IMG/VR virus record: IMGVR_UViG_3300045973_000169
Coordinates: 62,001-126,000 of that record
Length of the DNA stretch: 64,000 bases
Strand: one strand, 5' to 3'
In this document: one piece after another, positions 901 to 30,893 of the stretch
Layout: each line of letters starts with the position of its first letter
Position numbering within the stretch: position 1 is the stretch's first letter
Notes under the pieces: model-generated
Databases searched by the model: none
Told to the model about the DNA's origin: nothing
What the model saw: the letters and a program-made list of their open reading frames with translations, nothing else
Translations under genes and position numbers: made by a program

Positions 901-1167
901 ATGAAAAATGCTTTTGAAATATATAGTGATGCAGAGAAACTTGAAGAACAACTTAAACCATTTCAATACTTTATGGCTGGATGTGGGATAACTGGTTTTG
1001 CGAGTGCTTTTTTAGCAATAATATGGTCTCCATTTGTTTATGGGGTATTTGGTTTGTTTTTAGCTGGTATTATTGCTGGGTTTCTTGTCCAATACGAAAA
1101 TAAAATTGGGCGATGGAAAAGAGAAGCTATTAGACTCTATGGTAGAGATGAAGAGGAGTATTGGTAA
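901..1167 (+). CDS. small membrane protein (2 TM)
   Basis: Two hydrophobic segments; stop overlaps RT start (TAATG). Confidence 0.6.
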   Translation: MKNAFEIYSDAEKLEEQLKPFQYFMAGCGITGFASAFLAIIWSPFVYGVFGLFLAGIIAGFLVQYENKIGRWKREAIRLYGRDEEEYW

Positions 1168-1925
1168 TGCTTGATCTTACTGATAAAAGATCCTTTTATA
1201 ATATATATCCTATTAAGAAGGCTAATGGTAAGATTAGGATTATACATGCTCCTAAAAAAGAACTTAAAGATGAACAGAAAAAGCTTGCAGATGCATTAGA
1301 AAAATGGTATAATCCTCCTGATTGTGTATTCGGTTTTATCAAAGGTAAATCTCCTAAAGACTTAGCTCAACATCATATTAATAAAGATTGGATTGTTACT
1401 CTCGATATTAAAGATTTCTTTCCAAGTATAACTAAAGCTCTGTTAAAAGAGTTATTAAGATTAGATGACTATTGGATAGAAGTTGCAACTTATGAAGATA
1501 AACTTATACAAGGTAGTCCAGCGAGTCCTATATTAAGTAATCTTGTAATGCTATGGCAGGATAAGTTCTTTGAAATGTATGCTTTTGTAAATGGGTATAC
1601 TTATAGTAGATATGCAGATGATTTAGTGTTATCAGGGATGGGTAAGCCTAAATGGGATTATATCAATTATATAGAGAGCCATTTAAATGGATTAGGTTTT
1701 AGATTGAATAAATCTAAGATTAAATTTATGTTTAAGAATCAAGAGCAAAGAGTTCTTGGTATTACAGTAAATGATAAGGTTAGTCTAAACCATAAAGTTA
1801 GAAAGAAGCTTAAAAATACGATTAAATATAATCCTATGAGCAATGTATTACAAGGCTATATGGCTTATGTTAATAGTATCAATAAAGATCAATTTAATAA
1901 AATAAAAGAACAAACAAAAGGGTAA
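1167..1925 (+). CDS. retron-type reverse transcriptase (compact, ~252 aa)
   Basis: K..G..R.I.AP, GF..GKS, LAQHH (NAxxH-like), LDIKDFFPSI, QGSPASPILSN, YSRYADDL, VLGITVN (VTG-like); ATG at 1167 overlaps upstream TAA. Confidence 0.92.
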   Translation: MLDLTDKRSFYNIYPIKKANGKIRIIHAPKKELKDEQKKLADALEKWYNPPDCVFGFIKGKSPKDLAQHHINKDWIVTLDIKDFFPSITKALLKELLRLDDYWIEVATYEDKLIQGSPASPILSNLVMLWQDKFFEMYAFVNGYTYSRYADDLVLSGMGKPKWDYINYIESHLNGLGFRLNKSKIKFMFKNQEQRVLGITVNDKVSLNHKVRKKLKNTIKYNPMSNVLQGYMAYVNSINKDQFNKIKEQTKG

Positions 1926-14356: not shown

Positions 14357-14433
14357 TGGCAACTTACTTTACAGCAGATTTACAAAAGAGTTATTAACAT
14401 TGGTAGTTAGTTAATGTCCAAGGAGTAACTCTA

Positions 14434-14988
14434 ATGATAAATAATGCTGGTAAAAATAATCCAAATTATAAACATGGATTACATTGTGAAATAAATTATT
14501 GTGTTTGTGGTAAAGAGAAAGATTATAGATCTGAATTATGTAAATTCTGCTCTGGCAAAGAATTACAAATTACTAAAGAACAAATTTTGGAATATCTTAG
14601 TAAATCTAAATCATTGCTTGAGCTTTCTAAATATCTTAATATTTCTAGACAATCTGTAACTAGATATATCAAAAAATATGATCTTGATATTTCGCATTTT
14701 AGCCCTGGACGAAATAGACCATATAGACTTGATCAGATATTTTGTATATCAGATACAAGAATAAATGGAACTGTTAAAAAATTTCTTATTGAGAATAAAA
14801 TATTAGAATATATTTGCTCTGAATGTAAATGTAAACCAATATGGAATAATATACTATTAGTTCTTGAATTAGATCATATAAACGGAAATAGTTTAGACAA
14901 TAGAATTGAAAATTTAAGATTCTTATGTCCTAATTGTCATTCACAAACAGATACCAACAAAGGTAAAAATTCTAAAAAGAAAGAATAA
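14434..14988 (+). CDS. HNH homing endonuclease
   Basis: LELDHINGNSLDNRIENLRFLCPNCHSQT; NNPNYKHG. Confidence 0.92.
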   Translation: MINNAGKNNPNYKHGLHCEINYCVCGKEKDYRSELCKFCSGKELQITKEQILEYLSKSKSLLELSKYLNISRQSVTRYIKKYDLDISHFSPGRNRPYRLDQIFCISDTRINGTVKKFLIENKILEYICSECKCKPIWNNILLVLELDHINGNSLDNRIENLRFLCPNCHSQTDTNKGKNSKKKE

Positions 14989-14990
14989 TT

Positions 14991-15538
14991 ATGAATAGTG
15001 AGGGAAATGCAAGTCGTGGTAAGGTTTATTTTACTGCTGACTTGCATTAGTTAATTTAGGTCATAGTAACATTATCCGTTATTGCAATAGACCTTTTAAG
15101 AGTGCAGAAGAAATGGATGATACTATTATCAAAAATTTTAATGCTATTCTTAAACCTAATGATGAGTTATATATTCTAGGAGATACTTGCTTTACTGGAA
15201 GAGATCTTCGTGGATATATGGCTAATATACCAGGTCAAAAGTTTTGTATTCTTGGGAATCATGACCCTAAACAATTTGATAGTAATATCTTCGCTTGGGT
15301 TAAAGATGTTAAGATGATTAAAGTTGGAGAGCAACATATATTCTTATCTCATTATGCACATAGACAATGGCCTCAGTCTCATTATGGAGCTTGGCATTTA
15401 TATGGACATGATCATGGGACTCTAGAGGATTTTGGAATGTCAACAGATGTAGGTGTGGATTCTTGGGATTATAAGCCTGTGTCTTTTGATCAATTAAAAG
15501 AAAGATTTAAAGGGCGTGAGCCCCGCAAACATCACTAA
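14991..15538 (+). pseudogene. calcineurin-like metallophosphoesterase, interrupted by an 8-nt insertion (15048-15055)
   Basis: YFTADLH*, then in another frame LGHSNIIRYCNRPF...ILGD...LGNHD...LSHY...LYGHDH...DVGVD. Confidence 0.75.
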
Positions 15539-15553
15539 AGAAAGGGAATCGTA

Positions 15554-15733
15554 ATGCAAACATTTGATAAAATTAAAGAATTAATTGCTGATGCTGAAGC
15601 TGATGTAGCCAAGGTTGATAAAGGGCAGAAAGCTGCTGCTAAACGTGTAAGGAAATTTCTTCAAGCTTTGATTAAAGCTGCTAAAGAAGCACGAGTAGAA
15701 GCTCTAGCAACTTATCGTCCGCCAACAGCTTAA
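15554..15733 (+). CDS. histone H1-like (Hc1-type) small basic protein, absent from ORF track
   Basis: MQTFDKIKELIADAEADVAKVDKGQKAAAKRVRKFLQALIKAAKEARV... (G.KAA..R.RK pattern). Confidence 0.7.
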   Translation: MQTFDKIKELIADAEADVAKVDKGQKAAAKRVRKFLQALIKAAKEARVEALATYRPPTA

Positions 15734-15741
15734 GTAAATTA

Positions 15742-16162
15742 TGGGGAAGGTATATATATGGTCCGTAGGGTTTATACCGTGCTATTAAGTTGGTGTTAGG
15801 ATAGCAAACTGATTATTGTTTAGATAATCTTTTAAAAGAAAAGCAGGACATCAACGTGCTCTTTCCTGCAAATGGGTTTCGAAAAGCATAAAACCCAAAA
15901 GCAGGAATGATCCCATCGCTCTCCTGCTGGGCCCTGGTCCCTGGACAAAAGGACCTGGTAAGGACCTGGCTGCGGTGGATCTGCAGCTCAGGATCCTGAA
16001 ACCGGATCCGTCAAATACGGCGGATCCTCGAAGCACGAGCACTCGAGACCGGGTGCTGCAGCTGGCCGGCGCTAGCGCTCTCCGCCTGCTGCGACGTCCC
16101 CAGTCTCCTCTCTCGAATTATAGTCCTCTACTAGGAATTGGCCTAGTAGGGGCTCCTATAAT
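15742..16162 (+). ncRNA. GC-rich structured, palindrome-dense non-coding element (unassigned)
   Basis: 113/180 G+C over 15901-16080; several hairpins with G-U pairs on + strand; strong 3' hairpin 16117-16162. Confidence 0.55.
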
Positions 16163-16188
16163 TAACTAACAAAATAAAGGAAGTATTA

Positions 16189-16800
16189 ATGGATACTTTA
16201 AAGTTTGTTCTTATAGAAGATACTACTGAAATAAAAAATATTTTAACAATTCTTGAATCTCAAAGTGATATCCAAATTAGCTTTATTAGTTTGGAATCTT
16301 TTAATAATAATTTTCCTAGATTCAGTGATATATTATATGAATATGCTCATCAAATTAAATCATTATACTGTCCTGTTATTGGAAATGTATTTGAAGATAG
16401 TGTTACTATTCTTAGTACATTAGAAGATATACTAGAAATTCCTATTAATCATATTGTTGTAGAGTCGAAACTGTATGATGATATTAAACAGTTAGTTGAT
16501 TTTTATCATGATGATTTACAAGATGGAAGTCTGAATATAAGTATCTATTGCAGTGCTTGGAATGAATCTAATGATGAGCTACATGGACCTATTGATTGTA
16601 TAGCTTATATTGAACGTAATAAACTACAAGGTGTTTATGTAAGTTTAGATACAGATGATTTTAATGGAATGCATATGTCTGCTGCTTTTAAATATACAGA
16701 CATTATATATGTAAAAGGAAAAGATTATTATACTGAACCATATACGAAAGGCTATATTGAATATAGATTTAATAAATGGTTAGTGGAGACTTTTGTATGA
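16189..16800 (+). CDS. hypothetical protein
   Basis: 203-aa ORF with SD. Confidence 0.6.
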   Translation: MDTLKFVLIEDTTEIKNILTILESQSDIQISFISLESFNNNFPRFSDILYEYAHQIKSLYCPVIGNVFEDSVTILSTLEDILEIPINHIVVESKLYDDIKQLVDFYHDDLQDGSLNISIYCSAWNESNDELHGPIDCIAYIERNKLQGVYVSLDTDDFNGMHMSAAFKYTDIIYVKGKDYYTEPYTKGYIEYRFNKWLVETFV

Positions 16801-17191
16801 GTTGGTATGGATTAGTATCTGAAGATGGGAAAGATGTTTCAATCGGAAGATGTTCATTCTGGATAGTGTTAGGTTTGATGATTTGGTTTTGGTTATTTAG
16901 TGTTTCAGCTATACCACCAACATTAATTACAGCATTTGAATGGGTTATGAGTTATAATTTTGGGAAGAAAGTATTATCAACTGCATCTACAGTTGTAACA
17001 GCTATAAAAGGATAAAGAAATGAAACCACATAATAAGAAAAAAGTAGAACATGTAAAAGATGGAAATGAATTCTTTAGAGTTCGTATTGTTGAGCAGTGT
17101 TGTTCCGATGCAAGAAAATTAGTTAATTTAATGTTAGTTCTTAACAAGTATAATTTACAGTTAGCATCTTACGTCTAAAAAGGAGGGCCTT

Positions 17192-19159: not shown

Positions 19160-19759
19160 ATGATAGGAATATATTTTATAAAGAATAAAATAAATAATAA
19201 AATGTATATAGGGCTTAGTACTAATATAGAAAATCGTTTTTTATTTCATAAACGAAGACTTTTAAGTAATACTCATAAAAATTCTCATTTTCAGTCATCT
19301 TTTAATGAAAATGGAATTGAAAATTTTGAATTTGGAATATTAGAAGAATGCATTGAAGTTATTCTATCTGAACGTGAGAAATATTGGATTTCTTTTTATA
19401 GGAGCCACAATCGAGAGTTTGGATATAATAAAACTTTTGGTGGGGAGTTTGGTAAAATGTCTGATGAAATCAATGAAAGAAGAAGGCAAAAACTTAAATT
19501 GCAAACTATTCCACAAGAAATGCGTGATAGAATCAGTAAAACATTAACTGGCAGAAAACAACCTAAAGAAGTAGTTGATAATAGGGCAAAGTCTTGTAGA
19601 AAATGTAATGATGAAATTGAGCAAAAAATAATAGATTTATATATTAATAAAAAATTAAATACTAAACAAATTTCTGAATTGTTGAATATAAAAAGAACAA
19701 CAGTTATTAGTATAGTTAAAAGGAATAAAAATGCTAGCAGCCCTAATGGGAACGTGTAA
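19160..19759 (+). CDS. GIY-YIG homing endonuclease
   Basis: GIYFIKN...YIGLS..R...E..W...GYN; C-terminal HTH. Confidence 0.92.
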   Translation: MIGIYFIKNKINNKMYIGLSTNIENRFLFHKRRLLSNTHKNSHFQSSFNENGIENFEFGILEECIEVILSEREKYWISFYRSHNREFGYNKTFGGEFGKMSDEINERRRQKLKLQTIPQEMRDRISKTLTGRKQPKEVVDNRAKSCRKCNDEIEQKIIDLYINKKLNTKQISELLNIKRTTVISIVKRNKNASSPNGNV

Positions 19760-20228: not shown

Positions 20229-20999
20229 ATGCAAGATAGAGAATATATAATTTATTGTTTTTTAGATGAGAATAATAAACCTTATTATGTTGGACAAACT
20301 TATAATCTTAAGATGAGATTAAATGCCCATAATCAATTTATTTTAGATATTGAAGAAAAAAGATTACCATCTAAATACCCATATTATCGTAAGGCTAGAG
20401 ATTTATTTAAAAATGGTATAGGATTAAAAGTAAATATATTAGAAAATAATCTTACCAAAAAAGAAGCAGACTTAAAAGAGTCTGAATATATTAGTAAGTT
20501 TAGAAATGATATTTCCTGTAAGTTATTAAATATTTTAGCTGGTGGTGAATTTAATCAAAGAAATAAATTTGTGTCTGATGAAACAAAAAAGAAAATAAGT
20601 GAATCTAAAAAAGGGAAAAAACTTACAGAAAAACATAAAGAGTCTTTAAGAAATTGTGATAGGAAACAAAGGAACTGGACAGAAGAAGATAAAATTAAAT
20701 ATGCTAAAATGGCAAAAATAAATTTATTGAATAAACAAACTCCAGAGAGTATTGAAAAGATGCGTCAGTCTAAAGTTGGGCAAAAACATTCTGAAGAAAC
20801 TAAAAGTAAAATAGCAAGATTTGGGAAAGATCATAAAAGAGCAAAGCACTATTTGATTATTGCCCCAGATGGGACTAATTACGATATTCATGGACTTTCT
20901 TCTTTTTGTAAAGAATTTGATTTAAACCAAAGTGGACTATGGCATGCTCTTAATAAAGGAAATGGTAAATATAAGGGATGGCAAATTCAAGAACTGTAA
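20229..20999 (+). CDS. GIY-YIG homing endonuclease with NUMOD3 repeats
   Basis: IIYCF...YYVGQT..R...E...LLN; SDETKKKIS / HSEETKSKI repeats. Confidence 0.9.
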   Translation: MQDREYIIYCFLDENNKPYYVGQTYNLKMRLNAHNQFILDIEEKRLPSKYPYYRKARDLFKNGIGLKVNILENNLTKKEADLKESEYISKFRNDISCKLLNILAGGEFNQRNKFVSDETKKKISESKKGKKLTEKHKESLRNCDRKQRNWTEEDKIKYAKMAKINLLNKQTPESIEKMRQSKVGQKHSEETKSKIARFGKDHKRAKHYLIIAPDGTNYDIHGLSSFCKEFDLNQSGLWHALNKGNGKYKGWQIQEL

Positions 21000-22168
21000 A
21001 GTTAATTTATGTAAATGGGATTGGGGCTAACAATAATAAGTTCTATGATATGATCGATACAGAAGACGGATATTTTACTATTAAATATGGTCGAGTAGGA
21101 TCTACTGAAACTGTAGATAAGAAAGCTATTGGTAAATGGGATTCTGTATATAGAGAGAAGACTCGTAAGGGTTATAAAGATATTACTAAGTTGTATATAG
21201 AAGAGAAAGTGGATGTAGTTGATTTTGCTGATATTAGTGATTATGCTATTAAAGAGATAATTGCTAAATTGCAAGCTTATTCTAAGAAACAAGTAACTAC
21301 ATTCTATACTATCTCTGCTGAAAAAGTAACTAAGAAACAAGTAGATGAAGCTCAAACTATTTTAGATGGATTGATCCCATGTAAAGATGTTGAGTGTGCC
21401 AATAAGCTACTTATTGATTTATACTCTGTTATACCTAGAGCTATGAGTCATGTTAAGCATCATTTACTTTCTAGTTTTGAACAGAAAACTCTTGATAATA
21501 TGATAGCTAGAGAACAATCTATTCTTGACTCAATGGCTTCTTCTGTTAAGCAGGTTGAACTTGTAAGAGAGAATATAGATTCTAGTAAGACTTTACTTGA
21601 TGCTCTTGGTGTAGAAGTATATCAAACAATGCCTAGTGATGTAGATCTTATTAAAATGAAATTAGATAACTTAGTTGATAGATATTTGAACTCATTTAGA
21701 GTAGTTAACAAAAAGACTCAGGTTAAGTTTGATAATTTTGTAAATAAAATTGATAACAAAAAGACAGAGTTATTCTGGCATGGGAGTAGAAATGAAAACT
21801 GGATTTCAATACTTGAAACTGGTTTGGTCTTACGTCCGACCAATGCTGTTATTTCTGGGAAGATGTTTGGGTATGGCACCTACTTCGCAGACAAGGCTCA
21901 AAAATCCCTAGGATATACCTCTTCTTATGGTTCACTGTGGGCTAAAGGAAGTTCTAATGAAGCCTATATGTCATTGTTTGATGTCCATGTTGGGAATCAA
22001 TATATAGTTGAACAGAGTGAATCTAACCTTGATGCACAAAAGTTAAAGGCTAAAGGTAACTTTCATTCTACTTTTGCTAAAGCTGGTAGATCATTAATGA
22101 ACAATGAATATATTGTTTATGATGAAGATCAATCTACAATTAAATATCTTGTACAATTAAAAGGATAA
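20978..22168 (+). CDS. WGR-domain PARP-like ADP-ribosyltransferase
   Basis: NKFY...YGRVG (WGR); LY..IP regulatory-like region; catalytic WHGS, GKMFGYGTYFAD..KS.GY, NEYIVY (H-Y-E triad). Confidence 0.9.
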   Translation: MANSRTVKLIYVNGIGANNNKFYDMIDTEDGYFTIKYGRVGSTETVDKKAIGKWDSVYREKTRKGYKDITKLYIEEKVDVVDFADISDYAIKEIIAKLQAYSKKQVTTFYTISAEKVTKKQVDEAQTILDGLIPCKDVECANKLLIDLYSVIPRAMSHVKHHLLSSFEQKTLDNMIAREQSILDSMASSVKQVELVRENIDSSKTLLDALGVEVYQTMPSDVDLIKMKLDNLVDRYLNSFRVVNKKTQVKFDNFVNKIDNKKTELFWHGSRNENWISILETGLVLRPTNAVISGKMFGYGTYFADKAQKSLGYTSSYGSLWAKGSSNEAYMSLFDVHVGNQYIVEQSESNLDAQKLKAKGNFHSTFAKAGRSLMNNEYIVYDEDQSTIKYLVQLKG

Positions 22169-25269: not shown

Positions 25270-25602
25270 ATGGAAAAGGCTTGTAAACATCATGGATTAA
25301 CTAAGTTTAGTCTACAAAAGTCAAATGGCAGAGAAACTTATTATTGTGTTAAATGTTATATGGAAAGACAGAATCGTACAAGGAATAATAAGAAAGAACA
25401 AGCTTTAACCTATAAAGGTGGTAAATGTTCAATCTGTGGGTATGATAAATGCAGTGCTGCTTTAGATTTCCATCATCTTAATCCTCTAGAAAAAGAAAGT
25501 AAAAATGATTTAAGAAATCTATCATGGGATAGATTAAAGATTGAACTTGATAAATGCATTCTTGTATGTGCTAATTGTCATAGAGAAATACATTTTAAAT
25601 AA
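25270..25602 (+). CDS. HNH endonuclease
   Basis: GGKCSICGY...ALDFHH..P..K...LVCANCHREIH. Confidence 0.9.
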   Translation: MEKACKHHGLTKFSLQKSNGRETYYCVKCYMERQNRTRNNKKEQALTYKGGKCSICGYDKCSAALDFHHLNPLEKESKNDLRNLSWDRLKIELDKCILVCANCHREIHFK

Positions 25603-26424: not shown

Positions 26425-26520
26425 GGAAGAGCTGACCTCAAAGGCAGCGGGGCCCAGTCTTGAAAACTGGTAGCCGTCAGCAATGGCGGCGTGAGGGTTC
26501 GAATCCCTACTCTTCCTCCA
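26425..26520 (+). tRNA. tRNA-Ser(TGA)
   Basis: ccagt-ctTGAaa-actgg; long variable arm; CCA. Confidence 0.9.
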
Positions 26521-29058: not shown

Positions 29059-29224
29059 GTCTTTTTTAATGGATAATGTTTAGTTATCTAGTTTTTAACT
29101 CTGTGGAGTGCTCGGTAATCCGTTGAATTCTCAACCGCTTAAATCGCACTCCTTCCACCATAACAAGCCATGGTGGAAATAAGAGATAGGAGTAATCCTA
29201 TTTTTTTTATAATTTTTAAAATAT

Positions 29225-30128: not shown

Positions 30129-30893
30129 ATGAATAAATTAACACAAGAACAATGGATTGATAAAGCTAATAAAATCCACAATTATAAATATGATTATTCT
30201 AAATTAAAATATACTCATAATAAAAATAAAGTTTCTATTACATGTAAAAAACATGGGATATTTCAACAGCTTGCTAGAAATCATATTTTAGGTTCTGGTT
30301 GTAAAGAATGTATGAAAGATTCTCTTTCTGATAAATTTGCATTATCAAAAGAAGAATTTATTAATAAATCAAATAAATTGCATAATAATAAATATGATTA
30401 TAGTAAAGTTAAATATAAAAATTATAATAGTATAATTTGTATCATTTGTCCTGAGCATGAAGAATTTTGGCAAGAAGCCAGTAATCATTTATGTGGCAAT
30501 GGTTGTCCAGCATGCAATGAATCTAAAGGTGAAGTGAAAATTAGATTATTTTTAAATAAATATAAATTTAATTATACTGTTCAAGAATGGTTTAAGAATT
30601 CTAATATTCAATGTAAAAATCCACAAACAAATACTAAGATGCCTTTTGATTTCTATCTCCCAGACTGCAATACTTGTATTGAATATGATGGTGAACAACA
30701 TTATAAACCACATTCTTTTGGAGCTGATAAATCAATTGAAACAAAAGAAAAAAATTTAAAAATAATGCAATATAGGGATAGTATTAAGACCTTATATTGT
30801 TTAGAAAATAAAATAAAATTAATTAGAATACCATATGTTATGTTTAATAATATAGATATTATTTTAATGAAAGAATTATTAAATGAGAAATAA
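30129..30893 (+). CDS. homing endonuclease, Zn-ribbon + PD-(D/E)xK (paralog of 5895-6626)
   Basis: KYDYS repeats, GCPACNESKGE, PFDFYLP..CIEYDGEQHY. Confidence 0.87.
   Translation: MNKLTQEQWIDKANKIHNYKYDYSKLKYTHNKNKVSITCKKHGIFQQLARNHILGSGCKECMKDSLSDKFALSKEEFINKSNKLHNNKYDYSKVKYKNYNSIICIICPEHEEFWQEASNHLCGNGCPACNESKGEVKIRLFLNKYKFNYTVQEWFKNSNIQCKNPQTNTKMPFDFYLPDCNTCIEYDGEQHYKPHSFGADKSIETKEKNLKIMQYRDSIKTLYCLENKIKLIRIPYVMFNNIDIILMKELLNEK

What the first reader, a model, noticed from the sequence alone, without database searches (positions are those of the whole stretch)
15742..16162. GC-rich, polylinker-like structured element in an AT-rich phage
Seen: 63% GC over 15901-16080 and twelve 6-bp palindromes in ~220 nt, against about 4 expected at this composition: TTCGAA 15878, GGGCCC 15929, CTGCAG 15981/16056, GGATCC 15991/16004/16022, CTCGAG 16042, CAGCTG 16059, GCCGGC 16065, GCTAGC 16071, AGCGCT 16074, GACGTC 16093 (13 occurrences counting all copies). 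There are also 4x CCTGG, several GGWCC and GCWGC sites, and the longer palindromes TCAGGATCCTGA and GCGCTAGCGC. Twin AAAAGCAGGA...TCCTGC hairpins, hairpins with G-U pairs (ggatccgtc/ggcggatcc, gcactcg/cgggtgc), tgggga/tcccca end pairing and a strong 3' hairpin suggest a ~360-420 nt + strand RNA following an Hc1-like gene. Inference, as alternatives: a novel structured ncRNA; a template for the orphan retron-type RT that yields a multi-site DNA decoy against restriction-modification enzymes; a GGA-rich (about 12 copies) CsrA sponge; or a replication origin.
Basis: partly seen in the sequence, partly recalled or inferred. Interest (0 to 1): 0.78.

Follow-up and report, generated by a model that had tools for sequence, protein, structure and literature searches.

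The report
New structured RNA in aquatic jumbo phages
The GC-rich, restriction-site-laden stretch is a natural, strongly folded RNA element of about 420 nt, conserved in shape in a handful of uncultivated freshwater jumbo phages and matching no described RNA family; the "polylinker" look comes from a variable GC-rich extension, not from a vector or a proven anti-restriction device.

Summary
Window 15742-16162 is the GC peak (63%) and the palindrome peak of a 31% GC phage contig: 12 six-bp palindromes in 189 nt against 2.9 expected. It is not an artefact. An independently assembled 55-kb contig spans it without differences, and five other metagenomic phage contigs carry a homologous 240-390 nt non-coding element at the same place, between an Hc1-like histone gene and a conserved TIM-barrel ORF. 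The homologues share seven helices (A, B, C, D-outer, D-inner, F-lower, F-upper) that keep pairing while their sequences change. In the 5' domain 14 of 21 pairs show compensatory changes. Across all helices there are 18 G-U and no A-C pairs, so the + strand folds. Loop motifs are conserved. There is no Rfam, tmRNA or tRNA match. The palindrome-rich part (E, 15929-16117) is a variable expansion segment, 30 to 189 nt long. Its sites are not conserved, and three of the six homologues show no excess. My best reading is a new family of structured phage RNA, transcribed inside an operon and probably acting as a folded protein-binding RNA. Its function is unknown. The ideas of an RT template or decoy, a CsrA sponge and an origin found no support.

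The parts
14390..14399 (+). Nearest upstream copy of the intergenic motif GTTATTAACA, a promoter-like signal of this phage. It is the likely start of the transcription unit HNH - phosphoesterase - Hc1 - RNA - ORF5.
   Evidence: The motif has 10 exact copies, all on the + strand, typically 25-45 nt before start codons. None lies between Hc1 and the RNA or between the RNA and ORF5. That it is a promoter is inferred.
15554..15733 (+). Hc1-like (histone H1-like) gene, 59 aa. It is the invariable upstream neighbour of the RNA.
   Evidence: Pfam PF07432, 3e-14. Hc1 precedes the RNA in L004, L005, L098 and L097/L006.
15742..16162 (+). The whole structured RNA element, 421 nt.
   Evidence: MFE -170.6 kcal/mol, z -6.4. 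Covariance models built from other members find its 5' domain (R1) and 3' hairpin (R2) at the expected places. No Rfam or tmRNA match.
15742..15748 (+). Conserved 5' motif: UGGGGAA in the window and L004, UUGGAAU in L005 and L098. It marks the start of conservation.
   Evidence: Alignments.
15749..15778 (+). Hairpin A. Stem GGUAUA/UAUACC; conserved loop core GGNNC.U.GGG.
   Evidence: All 6 pairs of this helix show compensatory changes among 4 sequences.
15781..15805 (+). Hairpin B. Stem GCUAUU/GAUAGC; G-rich loop of the type UGNGGGUU.
   Evidence: 4 of 8 pairs show compensatory changes.
15811..15829 (+). Hairpin C. 7-bp AU-rich stem, invariant GUUUA loop, closing U-G pair.
   Evidence: 4 of 7 pairs show compensatory changes and 100% of cells are paired. 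The same hairpin type recurs at 29070-29090 and at L004 4756-4778, on the + strand only.
15842..15928 (+). Domain D, one long hairpin. Outer stem 15842-15848/15922-15928. Symmetric 14/14-nt internal loop (15849-15862 and 15908-15921) carrying the twin pyrimidine-rich motif (consensus AAAUCGCUUCU). Inner stem 15863-15869/15901-15907. Apical hairpin 15873-15897.
   Evidence: The outer and inner stems are fully paired in W, L004, L005, L006 and L098 with unrelated sequences. The twin motif is present on both strands of the loop in each (sequences).
15929..16117 (+). Region E, the GC-rich (64%) expansion segment of stacked hairpins. This is the 'polylinker-like' part, with 12 six-bp palindromes.
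   Evidence: Its length is 189 nt here, 169 in L098, 71-82 in L004, L005 and L006, and 30 in L007. Only a core of about 60 nt aligns. The palindromes lie in helices, for example GGAUCC 16004 pairs with GGAUCC 22 (16022), and GCGCUAGCGC and UCAGGAUCCUGA are perfect-palindrome hairpins.
16118..16161 (+). Hairpin F. Lower stem UUAUAG/CUAUAA, small internal loop, 11-bp upper stem, loop AAUUGG. This is the 3' boundary of the element, 27 nt before the ORF5 start.
   Evidence: Model R2, built from L005 and L006 only, finds it with E = 3e-6, and finds L098 with E = 2.5e-4. All pairs are standard in 6 sequences. No U-tract follows and no terminator is predicted.
16189..16800 (+). ORF5, 203 aa, the invariable downstream neighbour. 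Predicted (beta/alpha)8 TIM barrel of unknown function.
   Evidence: Six homologues are known, and each is preceded by the RNA where upstream DNA is available. AlphaFold2 pLDDT 83. The nearest folds are xylose-isomerase-like sugar epimerases, TM about 0.6.

Best explanation
Window 15742-16162 encodes a member of a previously undescribed family of highly structured phage RNAs.

Shown. The fold is conserved, it is made by the + strand, and it sits between the Hc1-like gene and ORF5 in a small clade of uncultivated freshwater jumbo phages. It consists of a 5' three-hairpin domain (A, B, C) with conserved loops, a long hairpin (D) whose symmetric internal loop carries the same pyrimidine-rich motif on both strands, a GC-rich expansion segment (E) of variable length, and a long 3' hairpin (F).

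Inferred. It is transcribed as part of a polycistronic transcript from a phage promoter-like motif upstream. It is probably released or stabilised by its long terminal hairpin, which has the geometry of an RNase III-type substrate. It then acts as a stable folded RNA that binds one or more proteins through its conserved loops and twin motif. The symmetry of D suggests a dimeric partner; candidates are the products of the two flanking genes.

The restriction-site palindromes are a by-product of how region E is built. Its helices are made of repeated self-complementary words and perfect-palindrome hairpins, in a lineage-specific extension that tolerates change. They are not a conserved functional feature.
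For: Synteny. Every homologue of ORF5 with upstream DNA, and every close Hc1 homologue with downstream DNA, has a 240-390 nt non-coding gap here.

Structure. Fold z-scores are -6.4, -5.0, -5.0, -5.0 and -4.2 for W, L004, L005, L098 and L007. In seven helices, 293 of 294 cells are standard pairs, against 35-48% when the partner is slid. In the 5' domain, aligned by a model built from only two members, 96% of cells are paired, 14 of 21 pairs show compensatory changes, no shuffle of 500 reaches this, and slid controls give 1-3 such pairs. Model R1 (from W and L004) finds L005 at 3e-5 and L098 at 6e-5. Model R2 (from L005 and L006) finds W at 3e-6 and L098 at 2.5e-4.

Strand. There are 18 G-U and 0 A-C pairs.

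Not coding. ORFs in the region differ in strand, length and sequence among homologues.

Not an artefact. A 55,203-bp Logan contig spans 14000-18000 with 0 differences.

Inside an operon. There is no GTTATTAACA motif and no terminator between Hc1 and ORF5.

Expansion segment. E is 30-189 nt long and only a core of about 60 nt aligns. The palindrome excess is strong in W and present in L006, marginal in L098 (P = 0.05), and absent in L004, L005 and L007.

Trans-acting hint. A second small structured RNA with its own terminator (about 29060-29215) shares the GUUUA hairpin and an AAAUCGC-type motif.
Against: There is no transcript evidence at all: no RNA run was listed, so the ends, processing and stability are inferred. 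The family has only six members, some partial, so covariation statistics rest on few sequences and on alignments fitted to the structure. No promoter or terminator of its own was found, which fits a cis-acting leader or intercistronic element equally well. No protein partner was identified. ORF5 looks like an enzyme, not an RNA-binding protein. The palindrome excess in W (12 against 2.9) is larger than ordinary helices explain, and its cause is inferred, not shown.
Confidence: 0.5

Rival explanations
1. The element is a cis-acting RNA: a long structured 5' leader or intercistronic element that controls translation, stability or processing of the ORF5 message (riboswitch-like or protein-responsive) rather than a free RNA.
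For: It always lies directly upstream of ORF5, in the same orientation, 20-30 nt from its ribosome-binding site. It has no promoter-like motif and no terminator of its own, so ORF5 must be transcribed through it. ORF5 is enzyme-like, with a TIM barrel related to sugar-phosphate isomerases, which is the sort of gene riboswitches control.
Against: No structure sequesters the ribosome-binding site. The spacer after hairpin F is AU-rich, variable and unpaired. There is no significant complementarity between the RNA and the translation-initiation regions of ORF5 or Hc1 (z from -0.3 to +1.0). No terminator/antiterminator alternative was found. A variable GC-rich insertion of 30-189 nt is unusual for an aptamer.
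Confidence: 0.3
2. The RNA is the partner or antagonist of the adjacent Hc1-like histone protein, for example a decoy that titrates it or an RNP with it. This is a special case of the protein-binding reading.
For: Hc1 immediately precedes the RNA in all five cases where upstream DNA is known. Chlamydial Hc1 is reported to bind RNA as well as DNA (reference cited in PMC12619734). The two-fold symmetric loop of D would suit a dimer.
Against: Other phages have Hc1-like genes without this RNA: L100 has Hc1 followed by a plain terminator. No binding data exist. The window's Hc1 is only 59 aa and lacks a lysine-rich tail.
Confidence: 0.1
3. The RNA is the template of the retron-type RT at 1161-1925, which copies the GC-rich part into DNA carrying many restriction sites that acts as a decoy for restriction enzymes.
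For: The RT is retron-type (PADLOC RT_III-A 6e-54; NCBIfam retron St85 family at 170 bits, below its cut-off of 235). It has no structured RNA next to it (z 0.17). An RT orthologue (54% identity) lies on the same 161-kb contig as the L004 copy of the RNA. The palindrome excess in W is real.
Against: The RT is 13.8 kb away, whereas retron RNAs adjoin their RT (established knowledge). Terminal pairing of the a1/a2 type is not conserved: a 6-bp pairing in W and a 9-bp one in L005, with none found in L004 or L098. The sites are not conserved. The L004 phage has the RT but only 1 palindrome in E, and L005 and L007 have 1 and 0. The closest RT relative (57% identity, on a 166,941-bp contig) comes from a contig from which no ORF5 or Hc1 homologue was returned. 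Co-occurrence in two related phages is explained by shared descent.
Confidence: 0.03
4. The element works at the DNA level, as a replication origin, a packaging site or a protein-binding array, and the hairpins are incidental.
For: It stands out in composition and palindrome density from a genome that otherwise avoids GC-rich palindromes.
Against: Compensatory changes preserve pairing, with 18 G-U and 0 A-C pairs, which is a single-strand constraint on the + strand. There are no iterons or repeats beyond short ones. The cumulative GC skew shows no inflection. The palindromic sites are not conserved among homologues.
Confidence: 0.03
5. The RNA is a CsrA/RsmA-type sponge that titrates a GGA-binding protein.
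For: There are 12 GGA in 421 nt.
Against: The expected number is 8 (P = 0.04), and UCC shows an equal excess, so the GGA are halves of helices. 9 of the 12 are paired in the fold. L098, L004, L005 and L007 show no excess. GGA is not conserved in the hairpin loops.
Confidence: 0.02
6. The stretch is a cloning-vector fragment, an assembly chimera, or a small GC-rich protein-coding gene.
For: It looks superficially like a polylinker, and 62-63 codon ORFs are present.
Against: A separate assembly covers it seamlessly. Homologues occur in four other samples. The ORFs are not conserved in strand, length or sequence.
Confidence: 0.01

Closest known systems
GOLLD and ROOL: large ornate structured RNAs found in phages and prophages (Rfam; cryo-EM in PMC12286853)
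   Same: All are large, multi-helix, GC-enriched non-coding RNAs encoded by phages, known from metagenomes, of unknown function and with variable peripheral helices.
   Different: No covariance-model match. This element is smaller (240-420 nt against roughly 580-800 nt). It sits between protein genes inside an operon rather than beside tRNAs. Self-assembly is untested.
Retron msr-msd RNA
   Same: Both are structured RNAs with a long GC-rich hairpin region, and a retron-type RT is present in the same genome.
   Different: The element is not adjacent to the RT (13.8 kb away). It has no conserved terminal inverted repeats. The putative template part is hypervariable and almost absent in L007.
RNase III processing hairpins of phage T7 early mRNA (R1.1 type; from established knowledge)
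   Same: Hairpin F is a stem of about 18-20 bp, interrupted by a small asymmetric internal loop, lying between two cistrons.
   Different: This covers only the 3' hairpin of the element. Cleavage is untested, and it cannot explain the conserved 5' domain and D.
6S RNA
   Same: Domain D is a long helix with a large symmetric internal bubble.
   Different: There is no Rfam 6S match. The bubble carries a repeated pyrimidine motif, and it is only one domain of a larger RNA.
tmRNA and other housekeeping RNAs carried by tRNA-rich jumbo phages
   Same: Similar size, GC enrichment in an AT-rich genome, and a 5' GGGG start.
   Different: ARAGORN and the Rfam tmRNA, RNase P and SRP models find nothing. 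There is no tRNA-like end and no T-arm, and the 5'/3' end pairing is not conserved.

Membership tests
Any Rfam 15 family (4227 models) | A covariance-model match at or above the family's gathering score | tested here: not met
   No match in the element at the gathering threshold. The best sub-threshold hits are unrelated miRNA and snoRNA models with E of 0.14 or worse. No consistent hit appears in the homologues L005, L006, L007 and L098.
tmRNA | A tRNA-like acceptor/T-arm domain plus a tag reading frame, as detected by ARAGORN or the Rfam tmRNA models | tested here: not met
   ARAGORN finds 17 tRNAs but no tmRNA. No tmRNA-clan hit even at E <= 10.
Retron non-coding RNA (msr-msd) | Located next to its RT gene | tested here: not met
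   The RT is at 1161-1925 and the element at 15742-16162, with a dozen or more ORFs of at least 70 aa between them.
Retron non-coding RNA (msr-msd) | Conserved terminal inverted repeats (a1/a2) closing the RNA | tested here: not met
   W has a 6-bp pairing (UGGGGA/UCCCCA) and L005 a 9-bp one. No equivalent appears in the folds of L004 or L098.
Retron non-coding RNA (msr-msd) | Reverse transcription into multicopy single-stranded DNA | not testable with these tools
   This needs co-expression with the RT and sequencing of the RT-DNA.
CsrB/RsmZ-type protein sponge | Many GGA motifs exposed in hairpin loops, conserved among homologues | tested here: not met
   GGA is 12 against 8 expected and 9 of the 12 are paired. 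There is no excess in four of the five homologues.
Cloning-vector polylinker or contamination | Absent from independent data, with junctions unsupported | tested here: not met
   A 55,203-bp independent contig spans the locus with 0 differences. Natural homologues occur in four other samples.
Riboswitch or cis-regulatory leader | An expression platform: a terminator/antiterminator, or a helix occluding the ribosome-binding site of the downstream gene | tested here: inconclusive
   No terminator was found, and no pairing with the ORF5 initiation region above chance. However, the element is necessarily part of the ORF5 transcript. Ligand or protein response cannot be tested here.
GOLLD/ROOL-type ornate RNA | Homo-oligomeric RNA-only assembly | not testable with these tools
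   Self-complementary words and loops (GAUC, CUAG) exist in E of the window but are not conserved. This needs native gels or cryo-EM.
New family proposed here (Hc1-ORF5 intergenic RNA) | Helices A, B, C, D and F in the same order, with covariation and conserved loop motifs, at the syntenic site | tested here: met
   Members are W, L004, L005 (= L009), L006, L098 and, more divergent, L007.

The most novel reading that the evidence does not exclude
The element is the founding member of a new class of ornate phage RNA that works as a particle. On this reading the conserved core binds the flanking Hc1-like histone and/or the TIM-barrel protein. The palindrome-rich GC helices, with their self-complementary words and GAUC/CUAG loops, mediate RNA-RNA self-association, as in the RNA-only assemblies of ROOL and GOLLD. 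The still more exotic reading, a template for the orphan retron-type RT giving restriction-site decoy DNA, is not strictly excluded, but the evidence is against it.
Probability: 0.1. Interest if true: 0.8.

Novelty: new variant of a known kind. Interest (0 to 1): 0.55.

Why it matters
Large, intricately folded RNAs of unknown function are rare, and several of those known (GOLLD, ROOL) are phage-borne and have turned out to form unexpected RNA-only assemblies. This element adds an undescribed family with clear covariation, a symmetric twin-motif domain, and a fixed partnership with a phage histone-like gene and an uncharacterised TIM-barrel gene. It is small enough (240-420 nt) to synthesise and probe. 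It also shows a structured RNA gene overriding a phage's genome-wide avoidance of restriction-type palindromes, which is a useful caution for scans that read palindrome density as engineering or as anti-restriction function. If the RNA binds the Hc1-like protein, it would be a first case of a phage RNA working with a histone-like protein.

Tried and rejected
1. Rfam at gathering and permissive thresholds on the window and on the homologues, and ARAGORN: nothing.
2. INPHARED phages by blastn with the element and by tblastn with ORF5 and the ligase: no match.
3. IMG/VR scans with the phosphoesterase, ORF5, the ligase and Hc1: these returned only the source contig or unrelated phages. The metagenome scan returned only the L005 contig again.
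4. IMG/VR pattern scan for hairpin C: 84 hits, all chance by nhmmer and inspection. The genome-collection pattern scan gave 5 chance hits, rejected by both covariance models.
5. MAFFT plus RNAalifold on raw segments gave inconsistent registers and no usable consensus. I replaced this with hand-mapped helices and covariance-model alignments.
6. No paralogue or repeat of the element in the window, so it is not a DGR template/variable-repeat pair and not a mobile GC cluster.
7. No antisense pairing of the RNA with the Hc1 or ORF5 start regions above chance.
8. The idea that the window's E region is inverted relative to the others (CCUGG against CCAGG): local alignments do not favour the reverse complement.
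9. A putative promoter TAAGTAAAT at the Hc1 stop codon is not enriched.
10. A structured RNA next to the RT: none.
11. RNA-seq: no run was listed.
12. ORF5 function: only a generic TIM-barrel resemblance.

Full report
**Observation.** The stretch is as described. Window 15901-16080 is 62.8% GC in a 31.5% GC window, the highest 180-nt value in the 64 kb. There are 13 six-bp palindromes in 15875-16100 against 3.9 expected (0 of 5000 shuffles), and this is the densest palindrome window of the 64 kb. With dinucleotide-preserving shuffles, the GC-rich core 15929-16117 has 12 against 2.9 expected (0 of 2000). The rest of the window avoids such sites: palindromic hexamers with 4 or 6 G/C are at 0.44 and 0.30 of expectation. 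About a fifth of all GC-rich palindromes of the 64 kb therefore sit in 189 nt.

**Not an artefact.** The window comes from IMG/VR contig UViG_3300045973_000169, 206,638 bp. One DNA run, a pond metagenome that may be the source sample, holds it. A separately assembled 55,203-bp Logan contig covers 14000-18000 with no differences, joints or loose ends at the element.

**Homologues.** The downstream ORF (16189-16800, 203 aa) has five relatives among 5.8 billion proteins. Their contigs are L004 (Logan SRR22388251, also on a 161-kb contig), L005 (JGI 3300002027 = JFJP01052855), L006 (SRR11449212) and L007 (JGI 3300030838). Each carries a non-coding gap of roughly 270-345 nt in front of that ORF, preceded by an Hc1-like gene where the contig reaches that far. 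A search with the Hc1 proteins added L098 (JGI 3300045970), where Hc1 is followed by 390 nt of the same element up to the contig end. It also added L097, the upstream part of the L006 phage. Hc1-like genes of more distant phages lack the element: L100 has a plain terminator and L102 a different leader. No member was found in INPHARED, elsewhere in IMG/VR, or in the GTDB genome collection.

**Anatomy.** Reading the six sequences side by side gives one architecture:
- A 5' motif, UGGGGAA or UUGGAAU.
- Hairpin A, with loop core GGNNC.U.GGG.
- Hairpin B, with a G-rich loop of the type UGNGGGUU.
- Hairpin C, with a 7-bp AU stem, an invariant GUUUA loop and a closing U-G pair.
- Domain D, a long hairpin whose outer and inner stems enclose a symmetric internal loop. 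The loop carries the same pyrimidine-rich motif (about AAAUCGCUUCU) on both strands.
- Region E, a run of GC-rich hairpins.
- Hairpin F, with lower stem UAUAG/CUAUA, a small internal loop, an 11-13 bp upper stem and, in four members, a loop containing AAUUGG.

**Covariation.** Window coordinates are in the parts list. Across these seven helices, 293 of 294 sequence-by-pair cells are standard pairs although the stem sequences differ. Sliding the partner by 1-3 nt gives 35-48%. There are 18 G-U and no A-C pairs, so the + strand is the folded one. The helices were chosen by eye, so I tested them independently.

A covariance model built only from the window and L004 (5' domain, 21 pairs) finds L005 (E = 3e-5), L098 (6e-5) and the partial L006 (0.02) at the expected places, with filters off. 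On the resulting alignment 96% of cells pair and 14 of 21 pairs show changes on both sides. No shuffle of 500 reaches these values, and slid controls give 37-50% pairing and 1-3 such pairs. That alignment is fitted to the structure, and five sequences are few.

A model of hairpin F built only from L005 and L006 finds the window (3e-6) and L098 (2.5e-4), and weakly L004 (0.37). All members fold far better than shuffles, with z between -4.2 and -6.4. ORFs within the element are not conserved in strand, length or sequence.

**The 'polylinker' part.** Region E is 189 nt in the window, 169 in L098, 71-82 in L004, L005 and L006, and about 30 (a single hairpin) in L007. Only a core of roughly 60 nt aligns between members. 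The palindrome excess is strong in the window (12 against 2.9), present in L006 (4 against 0.9), marginal in L098 (6 against 2.7), and absent in L004, L005 and L007. The particular sites differ.

In the fold, the palindromes lie in helices. Some helices pair two copies of the same self-complementary word: GGAUCC 16004 with 16022 here, AGAUCU twice in L098, and GGAUCC twice in L006. Others are perfect palindromes that fold on themselves, namely UCAGGAUCCUGA and GCGCUAGCGC. There is also a direct tandem repeat, AAGGACCUGG twice. I infer that E is an expansion segment that grows by duplicating self-complementary words. The restriction sites would then be a by-product that the RNA's structural needs impose on a genome that otherwise avoids them. 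This inference is not proven, and the size of the excess in the window remains somewhat unexplained.

**Transcription context.** An intergenic motif, GTTATTAACA, occurs 10 times exactly in the window, always on the + strand and typically 25-45 nt before start codons. It also occurs in L098. I take it to be a phage promoter. The nearest copies are at 14390 (before the HNH gene) and, as a variant, at 17137. None lies between Hc1, the RNA and ORF5 in any member, and no intrinsic terminator is predicted in 15000-17000. The phage does use a classic terminator after another small RNA (below). So the element is most probably transcribed within a polycistronic RNA and is, at least at first, the leader of the ORF5 message. 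Hairpin F has the geometry of phage RNase III sites, based on established knowledge of T7 R1.1, and could define a processed end. No RNA-seq run was listed, so all of this is inferred.

**Neighbours.** ORF5 models confidently (pLDDT 83) as a (beta/alpha)8 barrel. Its nearest folds are xylose-isomerase-like sugar epimerases (TM about 0.6, identity about 12%), with no family match. The Hc1-like protein is 59 aa. Hc1-like genes were noted in a lineage of aquatic jumbo phages ('moraphages', PMC12619734), which may or may not include this phage. The RNA shows no above-chance complementarity to the start regions of Hc1 or ORF5.

The RT at 1161-1925 is retron-type, has no structured RNA beside it, and has an orthologue on the 161-kb contig of the L004 phage. 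But it is 13.8 kb away, the element has no conserved terminal pairing, and the L004 phage has the RT yet only one palindrome in E. The closest RT relative sits on a 167-kb contig from which no ORF5 or Hc1 homologue was returned. Co-occurrence in two related phages is what common descent predicts.

GGA is barely enriched (12 against 8), is mirrored by UCC, is mostly paired, and is not enriched in four of the five homologues, so the element is not a CsrA sponge. There is no skew inflection, no iterons, and the constraint is on single-strand pairing, so it is not an origin.

**Verdict.** This is a real, natural, conserved structured RNA element of a new family. Its conserved core is A-D plus F. 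The eye-catching restriction-site cluster is a lineage-specific GC-rich extension. My committed reading, at about 0.5, is a stable protein-binding RNA excised or stabilised from an operon transcript. The main rival, at about 0.3, is a cis-acting leader of ORF5. A shared module supports the trans-acting reading but does not prove it: a GUUUA hairpin and an AAAUCGC-type motif also occur in a second, terminator-bearing small RNA at about 29060-29215. The function remains unknown.

Noticed in passing
window 29060-29215 (+): A second candidate structured small RNA lies between tRNA-Leu and tRNA-Asn. It has a GUUUA-loop hairpin (29070-29090). A stem GGAGUGC/GCACUCC then encloses a 10/10 internal loop with CGCUUAAAUC, followed by the hairpin CCACCAU/AUGGUGG. 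An intrinsic terminator follows (AUAGGA-GUAA-UCCUAU plus U8). MFE z = -5.3 and no Rfam match. It shares modules with hairpin C and domain D of the main element.
   Followed up: partly
window 15811-15829, 29070-29090, 30834-30854; L004 4756-4778: Hairpins with a GUUUA loop and 7-9 bp AU-rich stems recur on the + strand only. By my rough estimate about 0.1-0.2 are expected among the 127 GTTTA on the + strand, and none occur on the - strand. They may be a shared protein-binding or processing signal. The one at 30834 is inside an ORF and may be chance.
   Followed up: partly
window 5858, 14390, 19125, 20189, 23815, 24443, 26560, 28417, 30094, 49283 (+); L098 1754: The motif GTTATTAACA has ten exact copies, all on the + strand, typically 25-45 nt upstream of start codons. 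It is probably the promoter of an early or middle gene class in this phage lineage.
   Followed up: partly
window 1161-1925 (+): A short (about 252 aa) retron-type reverse transcriptase with no adjacent structured RNA. It belongs to a clade of 240-260 aa RTs (46-57% identity), several of which lie on contigs of 100-167 kb (probably phage). An 88-aa ORF (901-1167) precedes it; from its sequence I take it to be a small membrane protein, though this was not tested.
   Followed up: partly
window 20978-22168 (+); L004 8165-9352: A phage gene with a WGR domain plus a poly(ADP-ribose) polymerase catalytic domain (Pfam PARP 7e-24). It is conserved in the related phage L004.
   Followed up: no
whole window outside 15742-16162: GC-rich six-bp palindromes are under-represented: 0.44 of expectation for hexamers with 4 G/C and 0.30 for those with 6 G/C. 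GGATCC occurs 2 times against about 7 expected from a Markov model. This is consistent with restriction avoidance.
   Followed up: partly
window 14434-14988, 19160-19759, 20229-20999, 25270-25602 (+): Several homing-endonuclease-like genes (HNH, GIY-YIG with NUMOD3) are scattered among the early genes and the tRNA cluster. The HNH at 14434 is absent from the syntenic region of L004 and L005.
   Followed up: no
window 26425-26520 (+): One of the 17 tRNAs scores just above the Rfam tRNA-Sec threshold (48.9 against 47 bits), but ARAGORN calls it tRNA-Ser (anticodon UGA). It is probably a long-arm tRNA-Ser.
   Followed up: no
L097 (end) and L006 (start), run SRR11449212: In this sample the assembly breaks inside the RNA, between the Hc1 stop and hairpin B, so the 5' part of that member is missing. 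This may reflect strain variation or low coverage at the element.
   Followed up: no
L102 1650-1850: A more distant phage has, after its Hc1-like gene, a different 190-nt non-coding stretch closed by GGGGGUCU...AGACCCCC. It may be an unrelated structured leader.
   Followed up: no
L004 4746-4938: A 190-nt gap after the DNA ligase gene of the related phage begins with a GUUUA hairpin and contains further hairpins (for example CCAAUGGU/ACCAUUGA). The window has an HNH gene near this position instead.
   Followed up: no
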